From positions 9,920,001 through 9,984,000 of the forward strand of contig NC_043020.1 of the NCBI RefSeq assembly GCF_006345805.1: a stretch of 64,000 nt of DNA, read 5' to 3'. The notes beneath the pieces are model-generated. The model searched no databases and was not told the DNA's origin. It was given only the letters and a program-made list of their open reading frames with translations. Shown piece after piece: positions 18,061-36,369 of this stretch. This DNA comes from Octopus sinensis. Lineage: Eukaryota. How positions within the stretch are numbered: the stretch's first letter is position 1; every line of letters begins with the position of its first letter. The translations under genes and the position numbers were made by a program.

Positions 18061-18352
18061 AAGTGGTGATGATATTTTATCAAGAAAAATGCACTCAATC
18101 CAGGCAGCAAAAATTATTTGTGTGAGCAACAGACAAGAAAACACAATATCAAAGTTATGGACATACATGGCCATGTTGGATGGCTCTTCTTTCCGTGTGT
18201 GTGCCAGCTGGTGAAAACCACAGTAGGTGATGAGATGAAGGGTGATGATGGATGGTGAGAAGAAGGCATCACATCCCAACTAAACAGATGTAAAGTGATG
18301 ACAATGATAATAGCAAGAAACTTTTCACCTATACTTTCTGTTCGAATAATGC

Positions 18353-18358
18353 TTTATT
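18353..18358 (-). terminator. Poly(A) signal of exon A
   Basis: AATAAA in the context ttttgtgaAATAAAgcatt, conserved after all six exons. Confidence 0.65.
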
Positions 18359-18578
18359 TCACAAAATAATATATAATATATATTATCCTTTGTGTGAAAT
18401 CACTGATACAATAATCTTTCCATTCTTTGTTTCTTGTTTTTCTTTTTCACCTATGTTCCTTTTCTCCTTTCGTTTTCCCTACTTATTTTTTCTGAAATGC
18501 CCGGCCACAAACTTTTGTGTCAAAGAAGAACGTCTCAGAAACACGAAAGACAAAATATTCCTGTAGAAAACAAGAAAG

Positions 18579-19143
18579 CTAACACTGTGAACTATAAAGG
18601 TGATGCCTCTTTGGTTTTGCAAGTTCTGTTAAACGTTCACTAGCAACCACATTCTGTGTGGTGGGGTTCACTCTGAAGGGGTCATATATGTCCTTACTCA
18701 TTTTCCTAGGCAGTGGTGTGCTTAGTTCTACCAGCCTTTGTGATGTTTTCCTTTTCAATGCTGAGTTGTTAATGCGGTGCTGAATCTCTTGATGTACTGA
18801 GTTACAAGAATGACATGCCTTTCCGACTGCTAGACTTCCCAGCGTTGGACAGACTGCACTACAGTAAACAGCGTCTCTTTTGCTTTCATACAACTTACTT
18901 TTCTGAAATTCCGCAAGCCAACAAATTGAGTGACGTGGTATCGGTACAGTAAGTATGTGAATTAAAGGTGATGGCTTTGCAATTTTGGTTGGTAATGGTC
19001 TCGCTGGCTTTGCAATTTTAGTTGGTAATGGTCTCGCTGTTATAATATGTGGATGAAATTGCTTTGAAACTGCAAGGTGAATCACTCTTGGACTGCAATT
19101 AGCATTCAGGGCAGCAGTTGACACTTGCCACTGGGATGTTGCT
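18579..19143 (-). CDS. THEG: THEG-like terminal exon A (distal)
   Basis: Same acceptor. Encodes ATSQWQVSTAALNANCSPRVIHLAVSKQ...VASERLTELAKPKRHHLYSSQC*. Carries an in-frame 33-nt tandem duplication. Confidence 0.8.
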
Positions 19144-20057
19144 CTGAAAGAAACACAAATTGTTTAATGAATGCTCTCTTTATTTTCCTCCTAGTATATT
19201 TATTTACATAGCTTGTTTGAAGGAGAGGAGACTTTCGGGTTAGGGACAGAAAGCTGGGGTAAGAAAGGAAGGCCTAAAACTGAAAATGGAATTGCTGACG
19301 TGCGAGAGAGGTTACAGAGAGTAAGGCAAGTCATTCATTTGTATCCACCAGTGTTGTGATTCCAAGTAGGTTTAAGCATAAGGGATTTTCTTTCTACTTC
19401 TCTGGATATGTGAAGACGCTGCACAGTGATGGATGAATGATGGTGCACATACCAACCCTATTAAGTTGTTTGTTAAATTTGCCAGAGAAAGAGAAAAGCA
19501 TTAGGATGAGTTCATCTATATTGAAGAACATAGATGTGAACAGCAACCAAAATCTAGGAGGTGCTGTTATGCCAGGTGATAAGATTGCTGTCTACACCAC
19601 CAAAACTAATTATGGTCTACTGGACACAATTTGTGTATTGCAATCTTTAGCAGACTTGATAGGGTATGTACATGTAGAAATGTGCCACATGTAGAAAGAT
19701 GCCACATGCAGATTTTGTTAGATAATAAAAATGCAGTCAGTACAAGCTGCGAAAATGTTTGCATGCAAAATAGCCATAAAGACATACCCGATTTAGGGGT
19801 ATACACAAGAAGATTGGACATCTTTTTTCTCCTTGAATATATAACAACTGGTAGAAACCACAGTAAATGATGAGGCAAAGAATGAGGGTGATCAGTGAAA
19901 CAAACCAGACCCATCCAACCAACCAATGAATAAAAAAAAAAGTAAACATGTAAAATGACGATGATAATGTTATGGACAAAGATGATAACAAAGACATCAA
20001 TATAAACAATGATGATGGTAAGAAATATTATACCTATACTTTCTGTTGAAATAATTC

Positions 20058-20063
20058 TTTATT
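20058..20063 (-). terminator. Poly(A) signal of exon B
   Basis: ttttgtgaAATAAAgaatt downstream of the stop. Confidence 0.65.
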
Positions 20064-20326
20064 TCACAAAATAATATATTATATATATATTATGCTTAGT
20101 GTCTAATCACTGACACTCAAATCATTTCATCCTTTTTTTTCTGACTGAGATGATATTTCATATATTGGGGAGATTTCCTACATTTTTTTATTTTGCTTCA
20201 TTTTAAGGGATTTTTTCCCCCTTCTTATTTTCTGAAATGCAAGCCCACACACTTTTGTAAAGAAAATATATTTCAAATACTCGAAACGTGATTTCTGTAG
20301 AAAAGTTTAAAATTAAAATAGTTAAC

Positions 20327-20861
20327 TTAAAGTCCGTATTTCTTTGGTCTTGCAAGTTCCACGATTCGATCACTAGCAACAGCAGGCTGTACAGAGAAAT
20401 CCACTTTCAAAGGCGTATCTGTGTTCTTAATCAGTCTTCTAGGATTTGGGCTGCTTAATTTCTCTATTCTCGGTGATGGTACAGCAGTCAATGCTGCCTT
20501 AGTAATGCGGCGCTGACTTGGTAGATTTGGTACAAAACTTGGATGCAATCCCTTGCTGACTGCTAACTTTTCCAGCCTCGGAAAAGATTCACTACTGATA
20601 ACAGAAGTTTGTTTAGTTGCATACAACTTTTTTTTCTGAACTTGTGGAAGACTAATATTTTTTCTCCGCAATGCTGGTACAGAAAGTGAAATAATTCGAG
20701 ATGAAGGTTTTGCAGTTCTGGCTGACAACGGCACTTCAGCTGGCACTGGTCTTGCTGCTTCAAAATTTGGATGAAGTTTCTTTGAAACTGCAAGGTCAAC
20801 CACTCTTGGACTGCAATTAGCACTCAGGGCAGTGGGAGCCACTTGCCACGCGGAAGTTGTT
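20327..20861 (-). CDS. THEG: THEG-like terminal exon B
   Basis: Same acceptor. Encodes TTSAWQVAPTALSANCSPRVVDLAVSKK...VASDRIVELARPKKYGL*. No Met in frame. Confidence 0.85.
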
Positions 20862-21771
20862 CTGAAAGAAACACAAATTGTTTAATGAATGCTCTCTTTA
20901 TTTTCCTCCTAGTATATTTATTTACATAGCTTGTTTGAAGGAGAGGAGACTTTCGGGTTAGGGATAGAAAGCTGGGGTAAGAAAGGAAGACCTAAACCTG
21001 AAAATGGAATTGCTGACGTGCGAGAGAGGTTACAGAGTGTAAGGCAGGTCATTCATTCATATCCACCAGTGTTGTGATTCCAAGTAGGTTTAAGCATAAG
21101 GGATTTTCTTTCTACTTCTCTGGATATGTGAAGACGCTGCACAGTGATGGATGAATGATGGTGCACATACCAACCCTATTAAGTTGTTTGTTAAATTTGC
21201 CAGAGAAAGAGAAAAGCATTAGGATGAGTTCATCTATATTGAAGAACATAGATGTGAACAGCAACCAAAATCTAGGAGGTGCTGTTATGCCAGGTGATAA
21301 GATTGCTGTTTACACCACCAAAACTAATTATGGTCTACTGGACACAATTTGTGTATTGCAATCTTTAGCAGACTTGATAGGGTATGTTACATGTAGAAAT
21401 GTGCCACATGTAGAAAGATGCCACATGCAGATTTTGTTAGAAAATAAAAATGCAGTCAGTACAAGCGGCGAAAATGTTTGCATGCAAAATAGCCATAAAG
21501 ACATACCCGATTTAGGGGTATACACAAGAAGATTGGACATCTTTTTTCTCCTTGAATATGACAACTGGTAGAAACCACAGTAAATGATGAGGCAAAGAAT
21601 GAGGGTGATCAGTGAAACAAACCAGACCCATCCAACCAACCAATGAATAAAAAAACAAGTAAACATGTAAAATGATGGCAGTAAAAAAGCCGAAGATAAC
21701 CACAAAGATATTGACTTAAACAATGATGATGGTAAGAAACATTTCACCTATACTATCTGTTGAAATGATGC

Positions 21772-21777
21772 TTTATT
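21772..21777 (-). terminator. Poly(A) signal of exon C
   Basis: ttttgtgaAATAAAgcatc downstream of the stop. Confidence 0.65.
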
Positions 21778-22050
21778 TCACAAAATAATAGATTAAATAC
21801 ATATAATGTTTAGTGTCTGATCATTATCACTCAAATTATCTCATCATTTTTTTTTTCTTACTGAGACGATATTTTATATTTTGGTGAGGTTTCATTTTCA
21901 TACATTTCTTTGTCTTGCTTCGTGTTAAGGGATTTTTTCCCCTTCTCATTTTCTGAAATGCAAGCCCACACAATTTTGAAAAGAAAAAATATTTCAAATA
22001 CTCGAAACATGAAGATTTCTGTAGGAAAGTTTAAAGTTATAATAGTTAAC

Positions 22051-22585
22051 TTAAAGTAGGTGTTTCTTTGGTCTCGCAAGTTCCACGATTCGATCACTAG
22101 CAACCACACGCTGTGTGGTGGGGTTCACTTTGAAAGGCTCAAATGTGTTCTTAATCAGTCTCCTAGGAAGCGGACTGCTTAGTTCCTCTAATCTCGGTGA
22201 TGGCATAGCAGACAATGCTGCCCTGGTAACGGGGCGCTGACTTGGTAGATTTGGTACGAAATTTGGATGCAATCCCTTGCTGACTGCTAACTTTTCCAGC
22301 CTCGCAAAAGTTGCACTACTGCTAAAAGTAGCTGGTTTAGTTGCATGAAACTTAGTTTTCTGACCTTCCTGAACATTAGCATTTATTCTCCGCGATAATG
22401 GTTCAGAAAGTAAAATAATTCGAGGTGAAGGTTTTACATTTCTAGCTGACAATGGCACATCAGTTTGCACGGGTCTCGGTGCGATAAAAAGTGGATGAAA
22501 TTTCTTTGAAACTGCAAGGTCAGTCAGTCTTGGACTGCAATTAGCATTCAGAGCAGCAGGAGACACTGGCCACTGGGGTGATGAC
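22051..22585 (-). CDS. THEG: THEG-like terminal exon C
   Basis: Same acceptor. Encodes SSPQWPVSPAALNANCSPRLTDLAVSKK...VASDRIVELARPKKHLL*. Confidence 0.85.
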
Positions 22586-23493
22586 CTGAAAGAAACACAA
22601 ATTGTTTAATGAATGCACTCTTCCTGTTTTTTCTTAGTTTATTTATTTACATGGCTTTTTGAAGGAAAGGTTTTCAGCTTGGGGTGAGAGGAAATGTTGG
22701 GGCCGATGGAGGGTATAGATAGGATAACTGAACTGGAAGTACATGAAGTGAAGGGTAGGACATTGATTTATAGCCATCAGTGTTGTGGGGCAGGCAGGTT
22801 TGAGCGAGAGGGTGTAGGTCTTTCTATTTCCTTGGGTGTGTAGAGGTACTGCACATTGATGAATGGGGGATGGAGTGGCCTGCTCTGTTGAGTTGTGTGA
22901 CCTTTGTGGTGGTGTGGTCCAGGTATGTCTACAGAGGGGATCAACAATGCATCTGCCTGTTTCCCCAATATAGAATGCACCATAGGATTTTTGGATGATA
23001 CTGTATTTGAGTTTGCATGATGTGCTGTGAATGTTTCGGGTGAAGTGGTGTTGTGGCCAGGACCCAAATATAATTGTGATGTAGAGACAGGTACATTTAA
23101 GGGCACCTGGTTGTGTGTGGATAGTCGCTGTGGAGCTTCAGTATAGGAGGTTACCAATGTTCTTGTCTTTCTTGGAAGTAGGGAGTGATAAGAACTGCTG
23201 TTGGATTGGAGAATTATATTTGAAATTTGCAGACAATTGTGTTTTAGTAAGAGGGCGGATAGTTGTAGTGGGTGTCCAACTTGGAGCTGTGGATATAGAG
23301 GGGTGGAAGAAGAGTGCCACTGTCTCTCACCTGGCAGAAAAGCGTGCATGGTTCACAACTGATTGTGGGTACTCTCAATTCAGGAAAATTTTGCATTTTA
23401 CCCATATCTGGGTGCAAAATTTTGATTCAATACTGCATAGTCAATGAAGTTGGTGGATTTTGGAGAATGGTGTAGCAGATTTAGTGTGTTTAA

Positions 23494-24570
23494 CCCTTTC
23501 GTTACCAAACCACCCGAAAAAAACTTTGGTTAATGTGACCAAACCGCCCAAAGCCGCCTGAATTTATCTATTCATATTTAAATGAGAATATCAGAGCAAA
23601 TCTCTTTAGTACATTCATGAAAATACGTATTATACTTCGTAAAGAGTTCAACTACAGTTTTGTACAAAAATCGAAGTGTAATTTTAATTCCGTGAATTTT
23701 GGGAGATTTTTTTCCGAAATTTGTTCCTATTGTGTTTTCAAAGTTTGTAATTCTGACAAAAAATGGATACGAATTTCATTATATCAAGCAGCGAGTCAGA
23801 ATTCGAAGGATTTTCTACTGAAGACCTTCATAAATCTAACTCTATGACTGAAAAAAAAAAGCATGTGGTATTTGATAATGAATCTGATGTTTCATTTTCC
23901 GAAAGTGAAAACAGTGAATCCGAGAGCTCCGACAGCGATAAAGAAAATGAATTGGCACCTGAATGGAGTGAAAATTTAAAAACTGTTTCTTTCGGTGATT
24001 TTTCTGAAGAAACTGGACCAAGCCACAGACTTTCCCAGAAGAGTAAAGCCTTAGACTATTTCTTTTTACTTTTTCGAATGAGCCTATTTGAAATCATTAC
24101 GGTAGAAACGAACCGTTACGCTAAATGTAAACAAAACGAAAGAAAGGATACTTTGTGGTTTCCCACAACCTTAAATGAAATTAAGGCTTATTTTGCCATA
24201 AATATTATTATGTGTATCAGAGAGTTACCCAGAATAACAAATTCTATCGTAAAATTTTGTTGTATACCCAATTGAATATTAGCTAATAACCCATTTTCTA
24301 TAGCGATGTTTGAACAAAATTTTAATAATTTTATATTTTGTTGAATTTACCTGTATCTACCTGCAATTAGAGTCACTTTGTGACAAAAATTATAGTATAG
24401 AATTGGTTGAGAACATTTCATTAAATTATCTTCCAAAATTCACGTTAATATATTGATAAATAAAAAAGTTATAGTTGTTTAATGAAACCAGACTAAATTT
24501 ATGATTATGTTAGAAATTAATTGAAACACATAAGGGGTGTATTTTGGTCAGAAATATAGTAACGAAAGGG
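23494..24570 (+). mobile_element. piggyBac element, internally deleted
   Basis: TTAA flanks (23490-23493 and 24571-24574), TIR CCCTTTCGTTAC...GTAACGAAAGGG, truncated PGBD-like ORF 23763-24275 (acidic N-terminus, DYFFLLF...VETNRYA...WFPTTLNEIKAYF). Confidence 0.85.
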
Positions 24571-25756
24571 TTAAGATCTTAAAAGGAATAGTGGAGAGAG
24601 GAATGAGAAATATTGAAGGTGATGTTGAGAAAAGCAATTGATATGTCAGATATGATAAGAGTAAGTTCCAAAATAAGGTAAAAAGAGTTCAAATAAAAAA
24701 TAGATGAAACTACCAATCTGTTGCCTGGTGTGAGTGATAGCACCAACACAGTTGACAACAGAACAACCATGCAACACAGCAGTGGTTACTGTGAGTTAGG
24801 GAAACACTTAATTTTTAATATACCCTACTAAAAGATTTGTGTAGGTGGGAGCCATATCGGTACCCATAGTGACACCACTATACTGTTTGTAAAATTCTCC
24901 AGTGAAGGAAAAGAGAGAGGGAGGTTGAGATCATTTAAGTAAAGGAATCAGATAGTGTTGTGTACACATAGGTGCTGTCAGTCTTGTAAGCTTGTAAAAG
25001 CTGACAACATTACCTGTGGAAGATGACTGAATGAGGTGTAGTGAGATGGAGCTTTGCCAGCACAGGGAGAAAAGAGAACAAGAAGAATTTAGTACATGGG
25101 TTTTATCTTTGATGTGTAAAGTGTAAGGCAGTGTCAAGTGGTTCCATCAAGAAAAATGTACTCAGCCCAGGCAGCAACAACTATTTATATGAGGAATAGA
25201 TTAAAAAAAAAAACAATACCAAAATTATGGACTGGCCGATGCCAGCGCCGCCTCGACTGGCTTCCGTGCCGGTGGCACATAAAATACACCAATCCGACCA
25301 TGGCCGTTGCCAGCCTCGCCTGGCACCTGTGCAGGTGGCACGTAAAAAAGCACCCACTACACTCACAGAGTGGTTGGCGTTAGGAAGGGCATCCAGTTGT
25401 AGAAACACTGCCAGATCAGACCGGAGCCTGGTGCAGCCTTTCTGGCTTCCCAGATCCCCGGTCGAACCGTCCAACCCATGCTAGCATGGAGAACGGACAT
25501 TAAACGATGATGATGATGATGATATATAACTATTTTGAATAGCTTTTCTCCCTCAGTGTATGCCAGCTGGCGATGAGCAAAGGATGATGATGGACACTAA
25601 GACAAAAGCACCACATCCAACCAACCAACCAAAGCAAAAAAAAATGTAAAAGATGTAAAATGATGATGGCAACAACAAAGATGAAAACAAAGATATTCAC
25701 AAATACAATGATAATGGCAAGAAACATTTCACCTATACTTTTCGTTCAAATAATGC

Positions 25757-25762
25757 TTTATT
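25757..25762 (-). terminator. Poly(A) signal of exon D
   Basis: ttttgtgaAATAAAgcatt downstream of the stop. Confidence 0.65.
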
Positions 25763-26007
25763 TCACAAAATAATATATAATGCATATTATCCTTTGTGTA
25801 TAACCACTGATACAAAAATCATTTCATTCTTTTGTTTCTGAGTCAGACAATATCTATAATTTTAGTGAGTTTTTTTCTTACTTTTCGTTTTTGCCTATGT
25901 TTGTTTTCTTCTTTTATTTTTCCTACTTATTTTTTCTGAAATACCCGGCCACAGAAGAACGTCTCAGAAACACGAAAGACAAAATATTCCTGTAGAAAAC
26001 AAGAAAG

Positions 26008-26551
26008 CTAACATAGTGAACTATAAAGGTGATGTGTCTTTGGTTTTGCAAGTTCTGATAAACGTTCACTAGCAACTGCATACTTTGCAGTGGGGATCAC
26101 TTGGAAAGGGTTGTATATGTCCTTAATCATTTTCCTAGACAGTGGTGTGCTTAGTTCTACCAGCCTTGGTGGTATTTTTATGTTCAAATGTGGCTTGGTA
26201 ACGGGCTGCTGAATTTGGTGACTCGTTCTGCTATGTAGTGACTTTCTGATTGCTAACATTTCCTGCTTTGTATAGGTTGTACAATTGCTAACCGAAATTC
26301 TTTTGTCTTCATACAACTTACTTTTCTGAAATTCCACAAGCTTACACTCTGCGTGACGTGGCACTGGTACAGCAAGTATACGAAGTCGAGGAGTTGGTCT
26401 TGCAGTTCTGGCTGACAACGGCACTTCAGCTGGCACTGGTCTTGCTGCTTCAAAATTTGGATGAAGTTTCTTTGAAACTGCAAGGTCAACCACTCTTGGA
26501 CTGCAATTAGCATTCCGGGCAGCAGTTGACACTGGCCACTGGGGTGTTGTT
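26008..26551 (-). CDS. THEG: THEG-like terminal exon D
   Basis: Same acceptor. Encodes TTPQWPVSTAARNANCSPRVVDLAVSKK...VASERLSELAKPKTHHLYSSLC*. Confidence 0.85.
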
Positions 26552-27351
26552 CTGAAAGAAACACAAATTGTTTAATGAATGCTCTCTTTCTTTTTCTCCT
26601 AGCATATTTATTTACATTGCTTGTTTGAAGGAGAGGAGGCTTTCAGGTGTGGGACAGAAAGAAAGGTTGGGAAAGATTTGCTATTCAATGTGGCCTACAA
26701 CAATCTTTGGATAAGTTGCACCCATCTTGGTGCTCATACCAATCCTGTCAATATGTTTGTAATATACTCCAGTAAAGAAAAAAGGGTTAGGATGGGTCCA
26801 GCTATGTTGAGAAACATAGACATGTACAGTAACCAAAATCCAGGAGGTGCTGTTATGCCAGGTGATAGATTGCTGTCTACACCACCAAAACTAATTATGG
26901 TCTACTGGACACAATTTGTGTATTGCAAATCTATAGCAGACTCGAAAAGATATGTTACATGTAGAAATGTGCCACATGTAGAAAGATGCCACATGTAGAT
27001 TTTGTTAGAAAATAAAAATGCAGTCAGTACAGGCTGCGAAAATGTTTGCATGAGTAATGGTCATAAAATAAAACCCCACCAAAATTGAGAACATACACAA
27101 GGAAGGTTTGGAAACCTTTAACTCTCCTTGCATATGCCAGCTGGTGGAAACCACAGTAAATGATGAGACAAAGAATGAAGGTGATCAGTGAAACAAAAGC
27201 AGACCCATCCAACCAACCAATGAATAAAAAAAAAAGTAAACATGTAAAATGACGATAATAATGTTATGGACAAAGATGATAACAAAGACATCGATATAAA
27301 CAATGATGATGGTAAGAAACATTTTACCAATACTTTCTGTTGAAATAATGC

Positions 27352-27357
27352 TTTATT
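27352..27357 (-). terminator. Poly(A) signal of exon E
   Basis: ttttgtgaAATAAAgcatt downstream of the stop. Confidence 0.65.
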
Positions 27358-27642
27358 TCACAAAATAATATATTATATATATATTATGCTTAGTGTCTAA
27401 TCACTGACACTTAAATCATCTCGTCTTTTTTTTTTCTGACTGAAATGATATTATAAATTTTGGAGTGGTATTGTTTTGAGATATATATATATATATATAT
27501 ATTTTATTTGCTTCAGCTTCGTGGGGTTCGCTTCATTCTTCTTTTTCTGAAATACCCATCCACAGGGATTTTGAGAAAAAAATATTTTTAAAATTCAAAA
27601 CATGAAGACTTCTGTAGAATAGAGGAAAGTGAAAGCAGTGAA

Positions 27643-28174
27643 CTAAAGTTGGTATTTCTTTGGCTTTGCAAGTTCCAATATTCGATCGCTAGCAACCACA
27701 TGCTGCGTGGAGGGGTTCACTTTGTAAGGCTCAAACGTGTTCTTAATCATTTTCCTAGAAGGTGGGGCACTTAGTTCTACTAGTCTCGGCGATGCTATAG
27801 CATTCAATGCTGCCCTGGTGATGGTACGCTGTTTTTGTTGATTCGGGACGAAATTTGGATGCAATGACTTGCTGACTGCTAACTTTTCCAGCCTTGGATA
27901 GGTTCTACTGCTAACAGGAGATGGTTTAGCTGAATAAAACTTGTTTTTCTGACCTTCCAGAAGTTTAGTGGTTCTTTTGCGCGGTATCGGATGAGCAAGT
28001 AAAATAATTCGAGGTGAAGGTTTTACATTTCTAGCTGACAATGGCACATCAGTTTGCACGGGTCTCGGTGCGATAAAAAGTGGATGAAATTTCTTTGAAA
28101 CTGCAAGGTCAGTCAGTCTTGGACTGCAATTAGCATTCAGGGCAGCAGGAGACACTGGCCACTGGGGTGATGTC
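27643..28174 (-). CDS. THEG: THEG-like terminal exon E
   Basis: Same acceptor (tttctttcag|G). Encodes TSPQWPVSPAALNANCSPRLTDLAVSKK...VASDRILELAKPKKYQL*. Confidence 0.85.
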
Positions 28175-28299
28175 CTGAAAGAAACACAAATTGTTTAATG
28201 AATGCACTCTTCCTTTTTTATATATATTTACGCTGCTTGTTTGAAGGAAAGGAAGCTTTCAGCATGGGATGGGAGGAAAGTTTAGGGTGTCAGGGAGTC

Positions 28300-29640
28300 A
28301 GTTGAGGGTATAGATAGGATAACTGAACTGCAAGTACATGAAGTGAAGGGTGGGACATTGATTTATAGCCATCAGTGTTGTGGGGCAGGCAGGTTTGAGT
28401 GAGAGAGTGTAGGTCTTTCTATTTCCTTGGGTGTGTAGAGGTACTGCACATTGATGAATGGGGGATGGAGTGGCCTGCTCTGTTGAGTTGTGTGACCTTT
28501 GTGGTGGTGTGGCCCAGGTATGTCTACAGAGGGGATCAACAATGCATCTGCCTGTTTCCCCAATATAGAATGCACCATAGGATTTTTGGATGATACTGTA
28601 TTTGAGTTTGCATGATGTGCTGTGAATGTTTCGGGTGAAGTGGTGTTGTGGCCAGGGCCCAAATATAATTGTGATGTAGAGACAGGTACATTTAAGGGCA
28701 CCTGGTTGTGTGTGGATAGTCGCTGTGGAGCTTCAGTATAGGAGGTTACCAATGTTCTTGTCTTTCTTGGAAGTAGGGAGTGATAAGAACTGCTGTTGGA
28801 TTGGAGAATTATATTTGGGGTTTCTATAGGAGAGTGAATGGCTGTAGTGGGTGTCCAACTTGAGGGTCTGCATATAGACGGATGGGAGAACAGTGCCACT
28901 GTCTTTAGCTTGGCAGAAAAGAGTGCAGAGTCCACAACTGATTGTGGGTACTCTCAGTTCTTGGGAAAAGCTGCATTTTCTCATATTTAGGTTCAAACGT
29001 TTGATTCAGTGTTGCATAGTCAATGAAGGTGATGAAATTTGGAGAATGGTATTTCAGATTTAGTGTGTTTAAGATCAGGGGAACTGTGGAGAGAAGAGTG
29101 AGAAATAGTGCTGGAGATGTTGAGAAAAATAAGATATGTCAGATATTGAAGGAGTAAATTCAAAGGTTAGGTTAAAGGAATTAATAAAAGAGGTGAACCT
29201 ATAAAGCTGTTGCCTGGTAAGCATCATAGCACTGACACAGTTGTCAATAGAACAACAATAGAGATCAGGAATGGTTACTGTGGATTTGAGGAAAGACTTG
29301 ATTCTCAATGTACCCTACTAAAAGATTTGTGTAGGTGGGAGCCAAATTGGTACCCATAGTGACACCACTAAAATGATTGTAAAAGAGATGAACCTATCAA
29401 ACTGCTGACTGGTGAGTATGGTAACACTGAAACAGTTATCAATAAACAACCACACAGCTTTGGAGTGTGTCCTGTGCGTTGAGAAAACATCTGCTTTTCA
29501 ATATGGCCTACAAAGTGTTTTGCATAACTAGGATCCATCTTGGTGTTCTGCGTGATATCACTGAGTTGTATGCAAAATTCTCCAGTGAAGGAGAAGCGGG
29601 TTTGGACAAGTTCATCTAAATGGAGGAATGTGACAATGTT
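28300..29640 (-). mobile_element. Decayed Penelope-like retroelement upstream of exon E
   Basis: Nearly identical over several hundred bp to 22700-23490, with RT-like translated fragments. Confidence 0.65.
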
Positions 29641-29946
29641 CTGGACAGGCAGAAGCTGGCAGTCTAAATATCCACCAAACATATGTGGACATACATACAC
29701 ACACACACACAGACATAATATATCATCATCATCATCATCATTTAACATCTGTCTTCCATGATGACATGGCTTGGACAGTTTGACGGGAGCTGGCAAGTCA
29801 GAGGGCTGCCCCAGGTTCCAGGTGTCTGTTTTGGCAAGGTTTCTATGGTTAGATGCCCTTCCTAACACCAGCTACTTTACAGAGTGTACTGGGTGCATGG
29901 GAATATATGTATGTGTGTGTATATATATATATATTATATATATATA

Positions 29947-30007
<61 letters not shown>

Positions 30008-30313
30008 ATTAAGGGTACCTAAGAGATACCACCATGCTAGAAATAGCAGCCAAAACTTGACTCTAAAACCACATTAAATGTTCATACAGCACCAAGAGAG
30101 AAGACAAAGAGACAAAATAAACTAGCAAAAAAAAAATTACTGACGTTAGGAAGGGCATCCAGCTGTAGAAACACTGCCAGATCAGACTGGAGCCTGGTGC
30201 ATCCTCTTGGCTTCCCAGACCCTGGTCAAACCGTCCAACCCATGCTAGCATGGAAAACGGATATTAAACAATGATGATGCTGATATATATAATCAATAAT
30301 ATATATATATATA

Positions 30314-31149
30314 CAGGGTGTGATGGGTAAATTGTTACCATTTTATATTTTTCATTTTGCAAATTCAGATTGTTTGTCTTTGATTTTGTCGACTACACAG
30401 TATAGTAGGGTCAGTTGGGCACCATCGGCGAGAAAAACAGCACCAGAAATTTGGAAACGACATGCTGTGCTGCTTGGCATTCACATCCAAAGCTCCAATA
30501 CGAACATTTCAGAGTGTTTTGGCATCAGTCTGAGGACATGTACCAAGAGCGATAAAGATAAAACATCCAGTCAACATCATGGTGCTTGGAGTGATTACTA
30601 ATGATGGCAACGTTATGTCTCCATTTAACATTCCCACATGACCTCAGACTCAACACGGATGCCTACATCAAGTGCCTGGAGGAGGTAGTGTTGCCCTGGG
30701 TTAAGAAGGTAGCTGCTAGAAGACCCTATGTCTGACAACAGCACTCTGCACCATGCCACACAAGAAGGAGAACTCAATTGTGACTGTCAGACAATTTCTG
30801 TGATCACATCACCCCTAACACCCAGCCACCTAACTCCCCAGATTGCAACCCCCTTGATTATTATGTGTCGGGCACAGTTGAGTAACAGACCAACAAAACT
30901 CCTTGTAACACCAAGGATTATGGCAGCATTCACCAACTTCATCAAGGACACCATCCAGAAGACTTGTAGGAGATTCAGAAGTCATTTGGAGTCCATGGTT
31001 GAAGCCAATGGTGATTTTATTGAATAAATTTACTCTTCAGAATTTCAAATATTTTAATGTAATTTTGGTAAATATATCTGTTAAAATGAGATGTTAGTGT
31101 TATTTTCATTTTTGCTAAATTTAGACGACAGTTTATACACCACGCCCTG
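30314..31149 (+). mobile_element. Decayed Tc1/mariner transposon
   Basis: TA flanks, termini CAGGGTGTG...CACGCCCTG, fragments MVLGVITNDG, WVKKVAARRPY, PPNSPDCNPLDYY and RRFRSHLESMVEANGDFIE. Confidence 0.8.
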
Positions 31150-31162
31150 TAATATATATATA

Positions 31163-31217
<55 letters not shown>

Positions 31218-31941
31218 ATATATATACACATATATATATATATATACACACATATATATATATACATACATATATATATATATATAAAATCAATTATATA
31301 AATATATATATATATATATTATTGATTAGTCATGGGGGAGACAATTTTCAATGCCTCTGAAAATGGTGGAAGAAAGAAAGTAGTAGTTATTCTTTGACCA
31401 AATATCTGAACCAAATGTTTGCAACAGGTGGAATCTATTAATGGCAGCCAAAATCCAGGAGGTGATATTAAGCCAGATGTTTGGTTACTGTCTACACTAC
31501 CAGAAATAAGAATGTTCTGTTGTGCGCAATTTGAGTGTTGCAAATTTACATGGACTTCACTGGAAATGCCCCATGTAGATAGATTCCACATGCAGATTTT
31601 GTTAGAAAATAAAAATGCAGTCAGTACAGGCTGCGAAAATGTTTGCACGAGGATTGGCTATAAAAAAAAATGCCAAAAATTAGAGACATGCACAAGGAGG
31701 TTGGAAACCTTTAACTCTCCTTGAATATGCCGGCTGGTGGAAACCACAGTAAATGATGAGACGAAAGATGATGATAAGTGAAACAAAAGCAGACTTATCA
31801 AACCAACCAATGAAAAAAAAAGCATGTAGATATGTAAGATGATGATGACAATGTCAAAGGCAAAGATGATAACAAAGACATCGATATAAACAATGATGAT
31901 GGTAAGAAACATTTCACCTATACTTTCTATTGAAATAATGC

Positions 31942-31947
31942 TTTATT
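31942..31947 (-). terminator. Poly(A) signal of exon F
   Basis: ttttgtgaAATAAAgcatt downstream of the stop. Confidence 0.65.
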
Positions 31948-32237
31948 TCACAAAATAATATATTATATATATATTATGCTTAGTGTCTAATCACTGACAC
32001 TCTAATCATCTTGTCTTTTTTTTTTTGCGACTGAGATGATATTTTATATTTTGGGGTGTGGTTTCATTTTCATATTTCTGTTTTTTTTTTTTTGTTTTTT
32101 TTTGAGGGGAGGATTTTTCTTTTTCGTTCTCATTTTTCTGAAATGACTATCCACACATTTTTGGCAAAAAAAATAACATTTGTAAACCTTGAAACATGAA
32201 TATCCATGTAGAATAAGATGGGAGTTAAAATGTTGAA

Positions 32238-32751
32238 TTAAAGGTGATGTGTCTTTGGTTTTGCAAGTTCCCTTAAGCGTTCACTAGCAATCACATGCTG
32301 TGTGGAGGGGCTCACTTTGAAAGGGTTGTATTTTTCCTTATTAAGTCTCCTAGAAGGTGGTGCGCTTAGCTCTATAAATCTGGATGGAGTTGTCTTGAGA
32401 GATGGGCGTTGGCTCGATTGATTCGTGGGACTAGAATGTAACTTGTTAATCCCTAACTTTTCCAACCTCGCACTAGATGTACTACTGCTAACAGCAGATT
32501 GTCTAACTTCATACAACTTGCGTTTCTGAAATTCCTCAAGTTTAATGGTTACTTTGCGTGGTAATGGTGCAGCAAGTACACGAATTCGAGGTGATGGTTT
32601 TGCATTTCTGGCTGACAGTGACACTTCAGTTTTCACTGGTTTTGGTTCTAGAAATTGTGGATGTTGTTTCTTTGAAACTGCAAGGTCAACCACTCTCGGA
32701 CTGCAAATAGCATTCAGGGCAGCGGTAGACACTGGCCACTGGGGTGTTGCT
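32238..32751 (-). CDS. THEG: THEG-like terminal exon F (proximal)
   Basis: Acceptor ttgtgtttctttcag|A. Encodes ATPQWPVSTAALNAICSPRVVDLAVSKK...IASERLRELAKPKTHHL*. The ORF-track 'M' is GTG and there is no Met in frame. Confidence 0.85.
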
Positions 32752-33682
32752 CTGAAAGAAACACAACTTGTTTAATGAGAAAGACTAAAATTGGCCGTCG
32801 TTTATTATCAGAGGTCGGCAAAGGGGTCAATATTCATTATCCGAGCGATCAATAAACACCTGAAATAATTTGTGCATTTCGTGTGTTGAATTATTCTCAA
32901 TATAACAAGACGGGATTTAAAGTGGTGAACTGGTTGAATTAATAGCATGTCAAGCATAATGCTTAGTAGCATCTCATCCGTCTCTACATTCTGAGTTCAA
33001 TTTCCATTGAGGTTGACTTTGCCTTTCATCCTTTCGGGATTGATAAAATAAGTACCAGCTGAACATTGTGGTCGATATAATCGACTTACATTCATCCCCC
33101 GAAATTGTTGGCCTTGTATCAAAATTTGTATCAAAATTTGAAATCAGTATCGTAGGAGTTGAATTTTAAGTATTTCCAAGAAATTTCTTATTAAAAAGTG
33201 GTTAATGATATAAAAGAACTCATGAACTGTTGTTGTTTTTTTTTCTTTGTAATGGAAAAACTTTTTTATTATACTTTTCGATTCTATTATAGAAATTTCC
33301 ATGATAGAGGTCAATAAGTTCTCAAGAATTCCATAAAGGGGTCAATAATATAAGGAACTGGCTGACCCTCAGTTTTGATGATCATTTCCACAAATACCTT
33401 TACTATTTTGAGAACAACACCCAGTCATTCTCAAAATCTATTGAAACACCTTTCTGTTCATGAAATCCCCTTAAATCCCAATTTGACCTTCGTTTGCAAA
33501 AACAGGGAACGACATAATTTTTTTCCCTAGCATGCCTTGCTTTCCCTTGCTTAACGAGAGCATGCTAGATGAAAACTTAAGTGATCGTTATACAAAAACA
33601 GTTTGTTTGTTTATAATCCATGTGTGTAAATATGTCTAATCTTTGAGCTGTTTGCTGTCTAAAAGATAACGTGAAATATTAC

Positions 33683-33732
33683 CTGACTTGGAAACAGGTG
33701 AGAGTGGATTGACATCAGGAAAGAGCACCTGG
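33683..33732 (-). CDS. Possible small exon of the THEG-like gene (SQVLFPDVNPLSPVSKS)
   Basis: Acceptor tttttttcag|C (phase 2), donor TCAG|gtaata (phase 1). PVSKS resembles the THEG PVSxAA motif. No downstream phase-1 partner exon was found. Confidence 0.35.
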
Positions 33733-33943
33733 CTGAAAAAACACCTGCTTCAACAACATTTGGCAGATCGGAACTACATAACCATGTAAGCGTGACAAGA
33801 GGACATTAAGCGGATGATGATGAGGATGACAATGATGGTGGTGGTGGTGGTGGTGGTGGTGTTTAGCGGTTATTGTTGTTGGTGGTGGTGGTGGTGGTGG
33901 TGGTGGTGGAGTCACTGGTGTAAAGAAAAGAATTGAAACATAC

Positions 33944-34010
33944 CTGGGTGGAACGTATCTTGAGTGTAATTGCTTGGATTGAGAGAGAACCATAAGTCTT
34001 TGAGACACCG
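33944..34010 (-). CDS. THEG: Shared (constant) exon of the THEG/SPMAP2-like gene
   Basis: Acceptor ctctccaatctgcag|, donor CCCAG|gtatgt, 67 nt. Encodes (A)VSQRLMVLSQSKQLHSRYVPP(R), a THEG-type repeat. Its phase-2 end fits all six downstream acceptors. Confidence 0.75.
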
Positions 34011-34069
34011 CTGCAGATTGGAGAGAATGGTAGAGATGTAGTTGTGTTAGAAGTGGATCGTTACACATT

Positions 34070-34690
34070 TGTGTGGGTGGGTGGGTGTCTGGGTGTGTGA
34101 GAAAGTGTGTGTGTGTGTGTGTGCATGTGTGTGGTGAGTGTGTGTGTGTGTCCATGTGTGAGTGTGTGTGTCCATGTGTGTGAGTGTGTGTGTATGTGAA
34201 TGTGTGTGTGCATGTGTGTGAGTGTGTGGGTGTGTATGTGAATGTGTGAGAGTGTGTGTGTGTGTGTGTGCATGTGTGTGGTGAGTGTGTGTGTGTGTGT
34301 CCATGTGTGAGTGTGTGTGTCCATGTGTGTGAGTGTGTGTGTATGTGAATGTGTGTGTGCATGTGTGTGAGTGTGTGGGTGTGTATGTGAATGTGTGAGA
34401 AAGTGTGTGTGTGTGTGTGTGCATGTGTGTGGTGAGTGTGTGTGTCCATGTGTGTGAGTGTGTGTGTATGTGAATGTGTGTGTGCATGTGTGTGAGTGTG
34501 TGGGTGTGTATGTGAATGTGTGAGAAAGTGTGTGTGTGTGTGTGCATGTGTGTGGTGAGTGTGTGTGTCCATGTGTGTGAGTGTGTGTGTATGTGAATGT
34601 GTGTGTGCATGTGTGTGAGTGTGTGGGTGTGTATGTGAATGTGTGAGAAAGTGTGTGTGTATGTGTGTGTATGTGTGAATATGTGAGAAC
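34070..34690. repeat. Complex (GT)n minisatellite
   Basis: GT-rich units with recurring ccatgtgtgtgagt, atgtgaat and gagaaagt interruptions. Confidence 0.9.
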
Positions 34691-34887
34691 GTGTATGCAT
34701 AGCCATGTGTGTTTCTGAGACTGAGTGTGCCTCTCCTTGATGCTAACAGTGATATAAAACAATATCAACAAAGTACAGTCTTAAAGAGAAAGCCTTCGAC
34801 AATCCAACCATGGTCAAAAACGACGAGACTCAAACAAACAAGCTGTTACTCAACAATTAGCCAGAAATGATTTTTAAAATGAGAATA

Positions 34888-35666
34888 TCTTTATATATAA
34901 AACTGTAGTTGTGTGAGTGTCTGTCCCCTTCGATTTAGATTCCTAACTACTCCCACATTTTGCGGTGCAGTTTAACCAAATTCGGGTATCTTATAGTCGT
35001 GATTCATATCGAGCCCGTCTGAGTATTAGTGCGCGTCTACGATGAGTCTACGATTTTAAAAATAATTTAACATCATTTTTTATTCCATTTTAATGCATAA
35101 TTTTTCGTGTGTCGATGGCGGCAGAGTTGGCGTCCACGCTTAAACACCTGCACCTGTGGGGAAGGGAGTGTAAGGAAATCAACGTCGTAATGCGCTGTCA
35201 AGGAGACCAGCGTTCTTTTAGAACAACGACTTCATGGCTTGAAGACACCAAAACAGAAATGGCTAAGAAAGCCCGAATTGGCATCTATAAGGGAAGTAAC
35301 TCTCTAAAAATGCTTATATAGTTATTTCCCTTACAAACCCGAGCAACGCCGGGCAATACTGCTAGTCTTTATATATAAAAGTGAAGTTGTGTGTCTGTCT
35401 CCTACGATTTAGATTCCTAACTACTCCCACATTTTGCAGTGCAGTTTAACCAAATTCGGGTATCTTATAGTTGTGATTCATATTGAGCCCTTCTGGGTAT
35501 TAGAGCGCATCTACGATGAGTCTACAATTTAAAAAAAAATTTACCATAATTTTTTCCCATTTTTAATGCAATTTTTTTTGCTATTATATAAGGGAAGTAA
35601 CTCTCTAAAAATGCTTATATAGTTATTTCCCTTACAAACCCGAGCAACGCCGGGCGATACTGCTAG
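34888..35666 (+). mobile_element. Two head-to-tail non-autonomous Helitrons (34888-35365 and 35366-35666)
   Basis: Each has a 5' TC start, a subterminal hairpin CCCGAGCAACGCCGGG and a 3' CTAG. The pair sits between A and T. Confidence 0.75.
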
Positions 35667-35780
35667 TCTGAAATAAACTCGATTGCTCTTACAAATGAGA
35701 ATACTAAAAGTGAAACAGACTGCTCTCAAAAATTAAGTAAAAAAAAAACAGAAAAATAATCTAGAATCTTTGTCCAGTAC

Positions 35781-35863
35781 CTGATCGATCCCAATGGTAG
35801 TCATGGAATGTGAAGGTGGGTGTATGGGCCATGCTTGTAATGCTGTGTGTGTGTGTGTGCCAT
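35781..35863 (-). CDS. Probable upstream exon of the THEG-like gene (likely start ATG at 35832)
   Basis: Acceptor gtctttgttcccactgcag|, donor CAG|gtactg. In-frame ATG in strong context (agcATGG) gives MAHTPTFTFHDYHWDRS, and the phase-1 end matches the 33944-34010 exon. No protein homology recognised in this exon. Confidence 0.5.
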
Positions 35864-36369
35864 CTGCAGTGGGAACAAAGACAGTTTTCTCTATGAAGGC
35901 CTTTTTTAGTTTATCCATTCATATGTGGGAAGCACTCCATCGGTTACGACGACGAGGGTTCCGGTTGATCCGAATCAACGGAACAGCCTGCTCGTGAAAT
36001 TAACGTGTAAGTGGCTGAGCACTCCACAGACACGTGTACCCTTAACGTAGTTCTCGGGGATATTCAGCGTGACACAGAGAGTGACAAGGCCGACCCTTTG
36101 AAATACAGGTACAACAGAAACAGGAAGTAAGAGTGAGAGAAAGTTGTGGTGAAAGAGTACAGCAGGGATCACCACCATCCCCTGCAGGAGCATCGTGGAG
36201 CTTTTAGGTGTTTTCGCTCAATAAACACTCACAACGCCCGGTCTGGGAATCGAAACCGCGAGTCCGCTGCCCTAACCACTGGGCCATTGCGCCTCCACAT
36301 CCATTCATATAGTGTCTTTACAACCATAAAGGTCTACAGCATTGTTGAGAGTATGGATGATGCAATCAC

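What the first reader, a model, noticed from the sequence alone, without database searches (positions are those of the whole stretch)
18300..35863. THEG/SPMAP2-like gene with a cassette of six tandem, mutually exclusive alternative last exons
Seen in sequence: six paralogous - strand ORFs (exon starts 32751, 28174, 26551, 22585, 20861, 19143) share one upstream signature, cattaaacaa(t/g)ttgtgtttctttcag. All are phase 2. The frame is closed by TAA seven codons upstream of each exon, with no ATG in between, and B and F contain no Met at all. Each exon ends in its own stop followed by a conserved AATAAA 220-290 nt downstream. A single 67-nt exon (33944-34010) ends AG|gt in phase 2 and joins each in frame (...RYVPP-R-TTPQWPV...). 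No other copy of that exon was seen inside the array. Established knowledge: the xxSxRLxxLAxPK and WxVSxAAL motifs are THEG repeats, as in the sperm/flagellar microtubule-associated THEG/SPMAP2 family. From memory, human THEG reads AVSRRVEELSRPK...NNR-TTPVWPI at the matching position; this should be verified. Inference: one gene makes up to six isoforms of about 210-230 aa, about 80% of each from a variable 3' exon chosen by coupled splicing and polyadenylation. This would mirror the variable-first-exon design of clustered protocadherins and UGT1A. I know of no description of this for THEG.
Basis: partly seen in the sequence, partly recalled or inferred. Interest (0 to 1): 0.92.

Follow-up and report, generated by a model that had tools for sequence, protein, structure and literature searches.

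The report
Octopus sperm gene with swappable last exons
An octopus gene for a sperm-tail microtubule protein (THEG/SPMAP2 family) carries six tandem copies of its large last exon, each able to end the message on its own, so one gene can make several protein variants; this is a real new example of a design already known in flies, and NCBI's automatic annotation already partly captures it.

Summary
The window is Octopus sinensis chromosome CM016882.1. My labels A-F run in transcription order (A=32751 ...

- **Anatomy:** six minus-strand THEG exons share an identical acceptor. Each has its own stop and a conserved AATAAA site. Each joins in frame to a single-copy 67-nt exon.
- **Correction:** the start codon is not near 35863. 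It lies in an exon at 57545, 23.5 kb upstream.
- **Gene models:** RefSeq joins exons 1+2 to B and to C in O. sinensis, and to A', B', C' and D' in O. bimaculoides. None exists for E or F, and D is modelled as a separate gene.
- **Independent assemblies:** the six-exon array recurs in O. vulgaris. A gastropod THEG gene is single-copy.
- **Selection:** frames stay open against neutral expectation, and THEG core residues are constrained in A, C and D (B a non-significant trend). Linkers evolve near-neutrally. F looks relaxed.
- **Precedent:** Drosophila pipe and PGRP-LC use the same design.

Verdict: a real, conserved alternative-terminal-exon cassette and a new member of a known kind. Use of E and F, and mutual exclusivity, remain unproven because I could not see RNA data.

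The parts
57542..57545 (-). Coding end of exon 1: ATG plus G, followed by the donor GTAAGT. The 5' UTR extends upstream and the transcription start is unknown.
   Evidence: The RefSeq CDS range starts here. ATGGGTAAG matches exactly. The site is conserved in O. vulgaris and O. bimaculoides.
57546..57760 (-). Highly conserved 5' UTR or promoter stretch. It contains about five tandem ~20-nt units of the type AGCAGTGAGTTATATAC directly upstream of the ATG.
   Evidence: Three-species alignment and unit positions. About 96-97% identity to O. bimaculoides is my estimate read off the alignment, compared with about 8-11% divergence in other flanks.
33944..34010 (-). Constitutive 67-nt exon 2 (AVSQRLMVLSQSKQLHSRYVPP plus AG). 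It ends in phase 2 and encodes a THEG half-motif.
   Evidence: Sequence. Single copy in the window. Present in every RefSeq isoform.
32238..32751 (-). 170 codons plus stop, no Met.
   Evidence: Orthologues in three other octopods. The O. bimaculoides isoform X4 uses the orthologue.
31942..31947 (-). Poly(A) signal of A, in the conserved context ttattttgtgaAATAAAgcattattt.
27643..28174 (-). Terminal exon B.
   Evidence: RefSeq O. sinensis isoform X4 is exon 1 + exon 2 + B, 100% identical.
27352..27357 (-). Distal poly(A) signal of B.
26008..26551 (-). Terminal exon C.
   Evidence: RefSeq isoform X2 (XP_036368682.1) equals my predicted exon 1 + exon 2 + C exactly.
25757..25762 (-). Distal poly(A) signal of C.
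22051..22585 (-). Terminal exon D.
   Evidence: The O. bimaculoides isoform X1 joins the orthologue to exon 2. In O. sinensis RefSeq gives it a separate first exon.
21772..21777 (-). Poly(A) signal of D.
20327..20861 (-). Terminal exon E. It is a C(5')/D(3') hybrid found only in O. sinensis and O. vulgaris, and it has no Met.
   Evidence: Hybrid profile. Absent from O. bimaculoides. No clean exon-2 model exists; it appears only as the 3' part of the O. vulgaris 296-aa concatenated model.
20058..20063 (-). Distal poly(A) signal of E.
18579..19143 (-). It is the most degenerate copy, with an internal 5-codon duplication.
   Evidence: Pfam 72 bits with two repeats. Keeps 78% of core residues. No gene model.
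18353..18358 (-). Poly(A) signal of F.
23002..23096 (-). Candidate alternative first coding exon (MYLSLHH...QTQI plus CA, donor GTATCA), used by RefSeq's separate 'D gene'.
   Evidence: The ORF and donor are also open in O. bimaculoides.
28597..28691 (-). Twin of that candidate first exon, upstream of B (99.5% identical). No public model uses it.

Best explanation
This is one THEG/SPMAP2-family gene of Octopus sinensis.

Transcription starts upstream of a tiny first coding exon (ATG+G at 57545). That exon is spliced across a 23.5-kb, repeat-filled intron to a 67-nt exon (34010-33944). The 67-nt exon is then spliced to one of a tandem series of homologous terminal exons.

Each terminal exon is a self-contained 3' module. 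It has a strong, invariant acceptor (TTTGTGTTTCTTTCAG), about 175 codons carrying three THEG repeats, a stop codon, a roughly 220-290-nt 3' UTR and a conserved AATAAA site with a downstream U/GU-rich stretch.

Inferred, not observed: none of these exons has a conserved 5' splice site, and each can end the transcript. So using one should exclude the others through coupled splicing and cleavage/polyadenylation. The products are about 200-aa proteins that share 24 N-terminal residues and differ in the remaining ~88%.

The cassette arose by tandem duplication of a ~1.7-kb unit. The ancestral order was A, [B,C], [D,F]. E is a later C/D hybrid in the O. sinensis/O. vulgaris lineage.

By homology the proteins are sperm-axoneme doublet-microtubule-associated proteins. 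A-D are very probably all in use. E is young and unverified, and F may be decaying.
For: Shown by sequence:
- Six identical acceptor signatures, with 0 expected by chance.
- Phase-compatible frames, closed upstream by TAA, two of them without any Met.
- Exons 1 and 2 are single-copy.
- An AATAAA lies 221-291 nt after each stop.
- The 16-nt acceptor core is invariant in all 20 copies from four octopods, and the poly(A) context is nearly invariant.
- Identity among paralogues peaks at the acceptor plus the first 90 nt (0.86-0.91) and within about 50 nt of the AATAAA (0.81-0.91). Elsewhere it is about 0.6-0.75.

Independent models:
- RefSeq O. sinensis X4 = exons 1+2+B and X2 = exons 1+2+C.
- RefSeq O. 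bimaculoides X4, X3, X2 and X1 = exons 1+2 plus A', B', C' and D'. These four products share one CDS start and have four different ends.

Independent assemblies:
- The window is identical to GCA_006345805.1.
- O. vulgaris GCA_951406725.2 has the same six exons in the same order and spacing.
- An unidentified octopod has A-, B- and D-type exons with the same acceptor.

Translation is under selection:
- All 5 exonic indels between O. sinensis and O. bimaculoides are multiples of 3, against 10 of 50 in the flanks.
- The joint chance of all five frames staying open under neutral substitution is about 4e-5.
- In a leave-one-group-out test, substitutions avoid THEG core columns in A, C and D (each p<0.001; pooled p=2e-8). 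Core dN is 0.040 against 0.149 in non-core columns.

Family and function:
- Pfam THEG 72-121 bits.
- A profile hits THEG chains in solved sperm doublet-microtubule structures, 8snb_8A and 8otz_Dn.
- The intron just before ...WPVS is at the same position in the gastropod gene.
Against: - I could see no RNA reads. RefSeq models are automated and their support is not visible here.
- No model joins exon 2 cleanly to A, D, E or F in O. sinensis, nor to F' in O. bimaculoides.
- RefSeq O. sinensis models D as a separate gene with a first exon in the spacer. That short ORF and its donor are conserved in O. bimaculoides.
- RefSeq X1 and X3 combine part of A with part of C, and the O. vulgaris model joins A to E. 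These contradict strict mutual exclusivity if they are real.
- Whole-exon dN/dS is 0.59-1.27.
- F keeps only 78% of core residues, and its core-column depletion is not significant (p=0.14). F' has AACAAA in place of the distal AATAAA.
Confidence: 0.7

Rival explanations
1. Partial cassette. Only the older exons A-D are functional alternative terminal exons. E (a recent C/D hybrid) and F (degenerate) are rarely or never used and are on the way to becoming pseudo-exons.
For: - No public model uses F, and E appears only in the O. vulgaris concatenated model.
- F has the lowest Pfam score, with two repeats.
- F keeps 78% of core residues, against 90-98% for O. sinensis A-D.
- F's core-column depletion is not significant.
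- The O. bimaculoides F' has lost the distal AATAAA.
- E departs from the WPVS and PFKV motifs.
Against: - E and F keep the perfect 26-nt acceptor, an open frame and the conserved poly(A) context in O. sinensis and O. vulgaris.
- F is open in three species despite 79 substitutions between O. sinensis and O. bimaculoides; the chance of that under neutrality is 0.07.
- Both F indels are 15 nt.
Confidence: 0.3
2. Nested transcription units. A repeated spacer element upstream of B and D carries its own promoter and a short ATG-containing first exon (23096-23002 and 28691-28597). Some terminal exons are therefore expressed as separate small genes, not only from the distal promoter at 57.5 kb.
For: - RefSeq's separate 209-aa 'D gene' (P0005) uses this exon with a canonical CA|GTATCA donor in the right phase.
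- A 99.5%-identical twin lies upstream of B.
- The ATG, the open frame and the donor persist in both O. bimaculoides copies, and all the indels there are multiples of 3.
- The element belongs to the ancient [X-B-C]/[X-D-F] duplication unit and is not a recent insertion.
Against: - In O. bimaculoides, D' and B' are joined to exon 2, and no product starting in the spacer is on record.
- In O. sinensis, B is joined to exon 2 although it has the same upstream element.
- A 32-codon ORF easily stays open by chance.
- Automated pipelines often invent a short first exon to complete a model (my own knowledge).
- C, E and F have no such candidate.
Confidence: 0.2
3. Serial inclusion. The exons are sometimes spliced to one another to give longer proteins with more THEG repeats. 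Examples would be the 296-aa O. vulgaris model, the old 487-aa O. bimaculoides model and RefSeq X1/X3.
For: - Such models exist.
- The O. vulgaris A-to-E junction uses a GT in the right phase, AG|GTTGGA.
Against: - That donor is weak, and it occurs only in A of O. sinensis and O. vulgaris, not in any other copy or species.
- The X1 and X3 junctions have no GT-AG, GC-AG or AT-AC at any possible offset (plus my enumeration). They look like template-switch or mapping chimeras between paralogues.
- The 487-aa model has been replaced by four clean isoforms.
- Every exon ends in a stop codon followed by a conserved poly(A) site.
Confidence: 0.05
4. Artefact. The array is an assembly duplication, or the ORFs are dead relics.
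For: The E and F spacers are 99-100% identical over some stretches.
Against: - The same six distinct exons occur in an independent O. vulgaris assembly, and five occur in O. bimaculoides.
- The exons differ by 25-56% in protein sequence.
- There is selection for open frames and for core residues.
Confidence: 0.02

Closest known systems
Drosophila pipe (tandem homologous, mutually exclusive terminal exon clusters)
   Same: Constant 5' exons are joined to one of a tandem series of homologous 3' exons that encode most of the protein. The series arose by tandem duplication. [quoted passage not shown]
   Different: The protein family is different (a sulfotransferase versus a microtubule-associated repeat protein), and so is the phylum. 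Here each variable unit is a single exon. Usage is documented only by automated models.
Drosophila PGRP-LC 3' variable regions; also lola and mod(mdg4) (the last two from my own knowledge)
   Same: A common 5' part is combined with alternative 3' cassettes, each carrying its own 3' end. The result is isoforms with different C-terminal domains.
   Different: PGRP-LC choice is reported to depend on competing RNA structures (PMC9013439). I found no pairing above shuffles between the conserved acceptor element and intron 2. From my own knowledge, mod(mdg4) uses trans-splicing; nothing here suggests that.
Clustered protocadherins / UGT1A (variable first exons)
   Same: A tandem array of paralogous large variable exons is combined with shared constant exons. 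One variable exon is used per transcript.
   Different: It is a mirror image. In those genes each variable exon sits at the 5' end and, from my own knowledge, has its own promoter, so promoter choice makes the selection. Here the variable exons are at the 3' end, and the choice must be made by splice-site and poly(A)-site use. This locus is not a member of that class.
Vertebrate SPMAP2 (THEG) and SPMAP2L (THEGL); sea-urchin THEG-like protein in sperm doublet microtubules
   Same: The same Pfam family. The octopus isoforms align with the C-terminal ~200 residues, including the ...RxxxLxxxK...R-TTPxWPx junction. Relatives are chains in solved sperm doublet-microtubule structures.
   Different: Vertebrates diversify by separate paralogous genes (SPMAP2 and SPMAP2L), whose proteins have extra N-terminal sequence. 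A gastropod THEG gene has six single-copy coding exons. Octopus has a truncated three-exon gene and diversifies through alternative terminal exons.

Membership tests
THEG / SPMAP2 protein family (Pfam PF14912) | THEG repeats scoring above Pfam's gathering threshold | tested here: met
   All six exon translations score 71.7-121.1 bits against a cut-off of 27, with 2-3 repeats each.
THEG / SPMAP2 protein family (Pfam PF14912) | Full-length sequence homology to recognised THEG/SPMAP2 proteins of other animals | tested here: met
   Hits to vertebrate, cnidarian, sponge, tunicate and gastropod SPMAP2/THEG proteins. The alignment shows shared motifs. The intron position is shared with the gastropod gene.
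THEG / SPMAP2 protein family (Pfam PF14912) | Physical association with sperm axonemal doublet microtubules | not testable with these tools
   By homology only: 8snb_8A and 8otz_Dn are THEG-family chains in solved sperm doublet-microtubule entries.
Tandem-duplicated alternative terminal exons (pipe / PGRP-LC type) | Two or more homologous 3' exons in tandem, each with its own functional-looking 3' splice site | tested here: met
   Six copies. The 16-nt acceptor core is invariant in 20 copies from four species.
Tandem-duplicated alternative terminal exons (pipe / PGRP-LC type) | Each variable exon carries its own stop codon and poly(A) signal and lacks a conserved 5' splice site | tested here: met
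   Stops and AATAAA at +221 to +291, in a conserved context. The only proposed internal donor is lineage-specific and weak.
Tandem-duplicated alternative terminal exons (pipe / PGRP-LC type) | Shared single-copy upstream exons in a compatible phase, with the variable exons unable to start translation themselves | tested here: met
   Exons 1 and 2 are single-copy. Phase 2 joins all six exons. TAA lies seven codons upstream, and A and E have no Met.
Tandem-duplicated alternative terminal exons (pipe / PGRP-LC type) | Transcripts that join the constant exon to each variable exon, one per transcript | tested here: inconclusive
   Gene models exist for B and C in O. sinensis and for A'-D' in O. bimaculoides.
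Competing-RNA-structure (docking/selector) control, as in Dscam and PGRP-LC | A conserved element at each variable exon that is complementary to one site near the constant exon | tested here: not met
   The best duplex of the shared 35-mer with intron 2 is -22.6 kcal/mol. Shuffles give -18.1 +/- 2.6, with a minimum of -25.1. Only one simple test was done.
Clustered protocadherin / UGT1A type (variable first exons) | Variable exons at the 5' end, each with its own promoter, spliced to constant 3' exons | tested here: not met
   The variable exons are 3'-terminal and begin with an acceptor. The constant exons lie upstream.
Ordinary tandem gene family (independent genes) | Each copy has its own start codon, first exon and promoter | tested here: inconclusive
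   As stand-alone ORFs, not met. A candidate spacer first exon exists for B and D only. C, E and F have none identified, and B', C' and D' are modelled from the shared exons.

The most novel reading that the evidence does not exclude
The terminal-exon variants are not alternatives for different tissues. They would be a co-expressed set of related microtubule-binding proteins that assemble side by side in a fixed longitudinal pattern on the sperm doublet microtubule. Known parallels are the trypanosomatid ArcMAP paralogues (pattern 1-2-3-4-4-4 at 8-nm steps) and mammalian SPMAP2/SPMAP2L, which are said to occupy a similar niche (PMC7617938). In octopus a single gene would then encode an axonemal repeat pattern through 3'-exon choice instead of through gene duplicates, with fast-evolving linkers under sperm competition.
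Probability: 0.1. Interest if true: 0.75.

Novelty: new member of a known kind. Interest (0 to 1): 0.4.

Why it matters
This is a clean, conserved example of a gene in which nearly the whole protein (about 88%) is swapped by choosing among tandem terminal exons. It occurs in a cephalopod and in a structural sperm-tail protein.

It offers three things:
- **A compact model.** Each unit is ~1.7 kb with an identical acceptor, which suits studying how splice-site and poly(A)-site competition picks one of several equivalent 3' modules.
- **A live case of cassette evolution.** The record includes a two-exon higher-order duplication, the hybrid exon E and the decaying exon F.
- **A testable link.** Isoform diversity could be tied to the periodic architecture of sperm doublet microtubules.

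It also flags annotation problems at this locus. RefSeq X1 and X3 are chimeras with non-canonical junctions. D is split off as a separate gene. The O. vulgaris model is a 296-aa concatenation.

Tried and rejected
- **Docking/selector pairing.** I tested the conserved acceptor element against intron 2 with RNA duplex energies. The first attempt timed out. The reduced test was not above shuffles.
- **RFX X-box.** None lies within 1.5 kb upstream of the start codon in any of the three species.
- **Hoped-for transcripts.** The short Logan contigs L003, L004, L006 and L007 all carry the intron signature, so they are genomic.
- **Exact look-up of predicted isoforms.** Exon 1+2 joined to A, D, E or F (O. 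sinensis) or to F' (O. bimaculoides) is not in the protein collection.
- **Species behind SRR11869391.** The literature search gave only a false prefix match to plant runs.
- **Literature on octopus THEG.** I found nothing relevant.
- **Pfam on other ORFs.** The 187-190-aa ORFs of the spacer element and the antisense spacer ORFs match no family.
- **The long spacer ORF as a real coding exon.** Rejected, because a stop breaks it in O. bimaculoides.
- **The ATG at 35863 as the start.** Rejected, because that frame stops after 20 codons (read) and RefSeq starts at 57545.
- **A formal claim of positive selection.** Rejected. Non-core dN (0.149) exceeds the flanking non-coding divergence (0.079-0.114). 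But exon dS is also high (0.169), so non-core dN/dS is 0.88.

Full report
**Labels.** I name the exons A-F in transcription order on the minus strand: A=32751, B=28174, C=26551, D=22585, E=20861, F=19143.

**1.
- The 26-nt string CATTAAACAA(T/G)TTGTGTTTCTTTCAG occurs exactly six times, all on the minus strand and each directly before a claimed exon start. Shuffles expect none.
- Reading one base into each exon gives open frames of 170-187 codons that end in their own stops.
- In that frame the signature itself supplies a TAA seven codons before the junction codon, with no ATG between. Exons A and E have no methionine at all. So none of the six can start translation alone.
- Each stop is followed by AATAAA at +221 to +291.
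- The 67-nt exon (34010-33944, cag|...CAG|gtatgt) ends two bases into a codon. Every terminal exon completes that codon to Arg.
- Neither this exon nor the start-codon exon has another copy in the window.
- All six translations pass Pfam THEG (PF14912) at 72-121 bits against a cut-off of 27.

**2. Where the window comes from, and what is already public.**
- A protein search shows the window is Octopus sinensis. The matching RefSeq locus, CM016882.1 of GCA_006345805.1, is identical to the window over 46,358 bases.
- RefSeq's coding region begins at ATGG|GTAAGT at 57545. The first intron is therefore 23.5 kb and full of repeats.
- RefSeq isoform X4 is exactly exon 1 + exon 2 + B. Isoform X2 (XP_036368682.1) is exactly exon 1 + exon 2 + C.
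- In O. bimaculoides, four RefSeq products share one CDS start and end at four different stops. They equal exon 1 + exon 2 joined to the orthologues of A, B, C and D. The accessions are XP_052832216.1 (A'), XP_052832215.1 (B') and XP_052832213.1 (D'), with isoform X2 (P0007) for C'.
- So the alternative-last-exon design is already embodied in automated annotation for four of the exon types.
- I found no publication describing it.

**3. Anatomy of the repeat.**
- The whole ~1.7-kb unit of exon plus downstream spacer is tandemly repeated. The longer A-B and C-D spacers hold extra material, including a piggyBac-type transposase fragment.
- Identity among the six O. sinensis units is highest at two places. 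One is the acceptor plus the first ~90 nt of the exon (0.86-0.91). The other is within about 50 nt of the distal AATAAA (0.81-0.91). Elsewhere it is roughly 0.6-0.75.
- Across 20 copies from four octopods, TTTGTGTTTCTTTCAG is invariant. The context ttattttgtgaAATAAAgcattattt..., followed by a U/GU-rich stretch, is nearly so.
- Those are the elements a self-sufficient terminal exon needs.

**4. Other species.**
- An independent assembly of O. vulgaris has the same six exons in the same order, with spacings of 4927, 1606, 3972, 1726 and 1722 bp. The array is not an assembly artefact.
- O. bimaculoides has five exons, the orthologues of A, B, C, D and F.
- E is absent from O. bimaculoides. In O. 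sinensis it is 100% identical to C over codon columns 21-40 and D-like from column 61 onward (77-97% nt identity), so it is a hybrid from unequal exchange.
- B resembles D, and C resembles F. The ~1-kb element upstream of B and of D is also shared and is old. This points to an ancestral A, [B,C], [D,F] arrangement.
- Genomic contigs from an unidentified octopod carry A-, B- and D-type exons with the same acceptor.
- A gastropod THEG gene (Babylonia areolata) has six single-copy coding exons. One of its introns sits at the same place, just before ...WPVS.
- The cassette is therefore a cephalopod, possibly octopod, innovation built on a 5'-truncated gene. I could not examine squid or cuttlefish.

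**5. Are the exons still coding?**
- Whole-exon dN/dS between O. sinensis and O. bimaculoides is high: A 0.94, B 0.59, C 1.27, D 0.67, F 0.96.
- Three other results show translation is under selection:
  - All five exonic indels are multiples of three, against 10 of 50 in the flanks. Indel density is 1.9 per kb in exons and 10-16 per kb downstream.
  - The joint chance that all five frames escaped a stop, given the observed substitutions, is about 4e-5.
  - In a leave-one-group-out test, substitutions avoid the columns that are invariant in all other exon groups. Results were A 1/32 versus 40/138, C 1/29 versus 47/146 and D 0/28 versus 40/149 (each p<0.001; pooled p=2e-8).
- Core dN is 0.040 and non-core dN is 0.149.
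- The picture is conserved THEG motifs joined by linkers that evolve at about the neutral rate. I do not claim positive selection, because exon dS (0.169) is also above the flanking divergence.
- F is the exception. Its core depletion is weak (8/36, p=0.14). O. sinensis F keeps only 78% of core residues. The O. bimaculoides orthologue has AACAAA where the others have AATAAA. E keeps 88%.

**6. Rivals.**

(a) Own first exons.
- RefSeq O. sinensis models D as a separate 209-aa gene. Its first coding exon (23096-23002) lies in the spacer element and has a canonical donor in the right phase.
- A 99.5%-identical twin lies upstream of B, and the short frame and donor persist in O. bimaculoides. An internal start site is therefore possible.
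- Against it, B, B' and D' are all modelled from exon 2, and C, E and F have no such candidate.

(b) Serial splicing.
- RefSeq X1 and X3 join part of A to part of C. At every possible offset those junctions lack GT-AG, GC-AG or AT-AC (plus my enumeration).
- I infer they are chimeras between co-expressed paralogous transcripts, or mapping artefacts. This remains unexplained.
- The O. vulgaris 296-aa model uses a weak donor (AG|GTTGGA) found only in A of O. sinensis and O. vulgaris.
- The old 487-aa O. bimaculoides model has been superseded.

(c) A partial cassette in which E and F are little used is a real possibility.

**7. What it does.**
- A profile of the octopus and vertebrate proteins hits THEG-family chains in solved sperm doublet-microtubule structures, 8snb_8A and 8otz_Dn.
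- A structural paper notes that SPMAP2 and SPMAP2L occupy a niche like that of paralogous arc-shaped proteins. Those proteins bind the outside of the B-tubule in a fixed pattern (PMC7617938).
- By homology the octopus products are sperm-axoneme microtubule-associated proteins of about 200 aa. They share 24 residues and differ in three THEG repeats.
- The mechanism of choice is inferred, not shown. Exon 2's donor competes for equivalent acceptors, and cleavage at the chosen exon's poly(A) site ends the transcript.
- I found no docking/selector-type pairing and no X-box near the start.

**8. Comparison and novelty.**
- Tandem homologous, mutually exclusive terminal exons are described for Drosophila pipe, and 3' variable regions for PGRP-LC (PMC9013439). 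From my own knowledge, lola and mod(mdg4) follow the same logic.
- The protocadherin/UGT1A comparison is a mirror image, not membership.
- I file this as a new member of a known kind. It is new for the THEG family and for cephalopods, and it is unpublished as far as I could find. It is also already partly annotated.
- Interest is moderate (0.4). It would rise if the isoforms proved to form a fixed pattern on the axoneme.

**9. Limits.**
- No RNA reads, transcript ends or proteomes were available to me.
- RefSeq models are indirect evidence.
- Only four octopods and one gastropod were compared.

Noticed in passing
window 20327-20861 (exon E): E is a hybrid. It is 100% identical to C over codon columns 21-40 and D-like from column 61 onward (77-97% nt identity). 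It is present in O. sinensis and O. vulgaris but absent from O. bimaculoides. It records an unequal exchange within the array.
   Followed up: yes
window 32562-32594 / 26329-26364 and 32709-32750 / 26452-26508: RefSeq O. sinensis isoforms X1 and X3 join part of exon A to part of exon C. The junctions have no canonical splice dinucleotides at any offset. They are probably template-switch or mapping chimeras, but this is unexplained.
   Followed up: partly
window 22586-23500, 28175-29300, and about 16940-17810: A ~1-kb element repeated upstream of D, upstream of B and (degenerate, 72%) downstream of F. It carries a 187-190-aa minus-strand ORF with no Pfam match, and a stop breaks that ORF in O. 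bimaculoides. In another frame it also holds the short first exon that RefSeq uses for a separate 'D gene'.
   Followed up: partly
window 19437-19694, 21155-21571, 26621-26998, 31419-31724 (+ strand); L002 18850-19383: Each spacer holds an antisense ORF of 85-177 aa sharing ...SNQNPGGAVMPGD.... It has no Pfam family and its length varies between copies, so it is probably not a gene.
   Followed up: partly
window 57546-57700 (- strand): About five tandem ~20-nt units (AGCAGTGAGTTATATAC-like) lie directly upstream of the start codon. By my reading of the alignment they are about 96-97% conserved between O. sinensis and O. bimaculoides, more than the surrounding DNA. They could be a promoter or 5'-UTR control element.
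   Followed up: partly
L002 24560-24600 (O. bimaculoides, downstream of exon F'): The otherwise invariant distal AATAAA reads AACAAA in the F orthologue. F' is the only O. bimaculoides exon without a RefSeq isoform.
   Followed up: yes
window 34066-34685: A (TG)n-rich array with a 149-nt period lies just upstream of exon 2 inside intron 1. It creates spurious 219-285-aa His/Thr-rich ORFs on the minus strand.
   Followed up: no
window 23763-24275 (+): A piggyBac-type transposase fragment (Pfam DDE_Tnp_1_7, 34 bits) in the C-D spacer.
   Followed up: partly
window 34011-57541 (intron 1): Intron 1 is 23.5 kb here, about 26 kb in O. vulgaris and only 2.5 kb in O. bimaculoides. It is filled with repeats: a 171-nt x6 array at 39538-40564 (98% identical), 184-nt repeats at 43802-45069 and a reverse-transcriptase-like ORF at 36342-36962.
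   Followed up: no
window 61502-62209 and 60632-60782: Tandem arrays with 129-nt and 63-nt periods lie upstream of the gene and give long spurious ORFs. Their nature is unknown.
   Followed up: no
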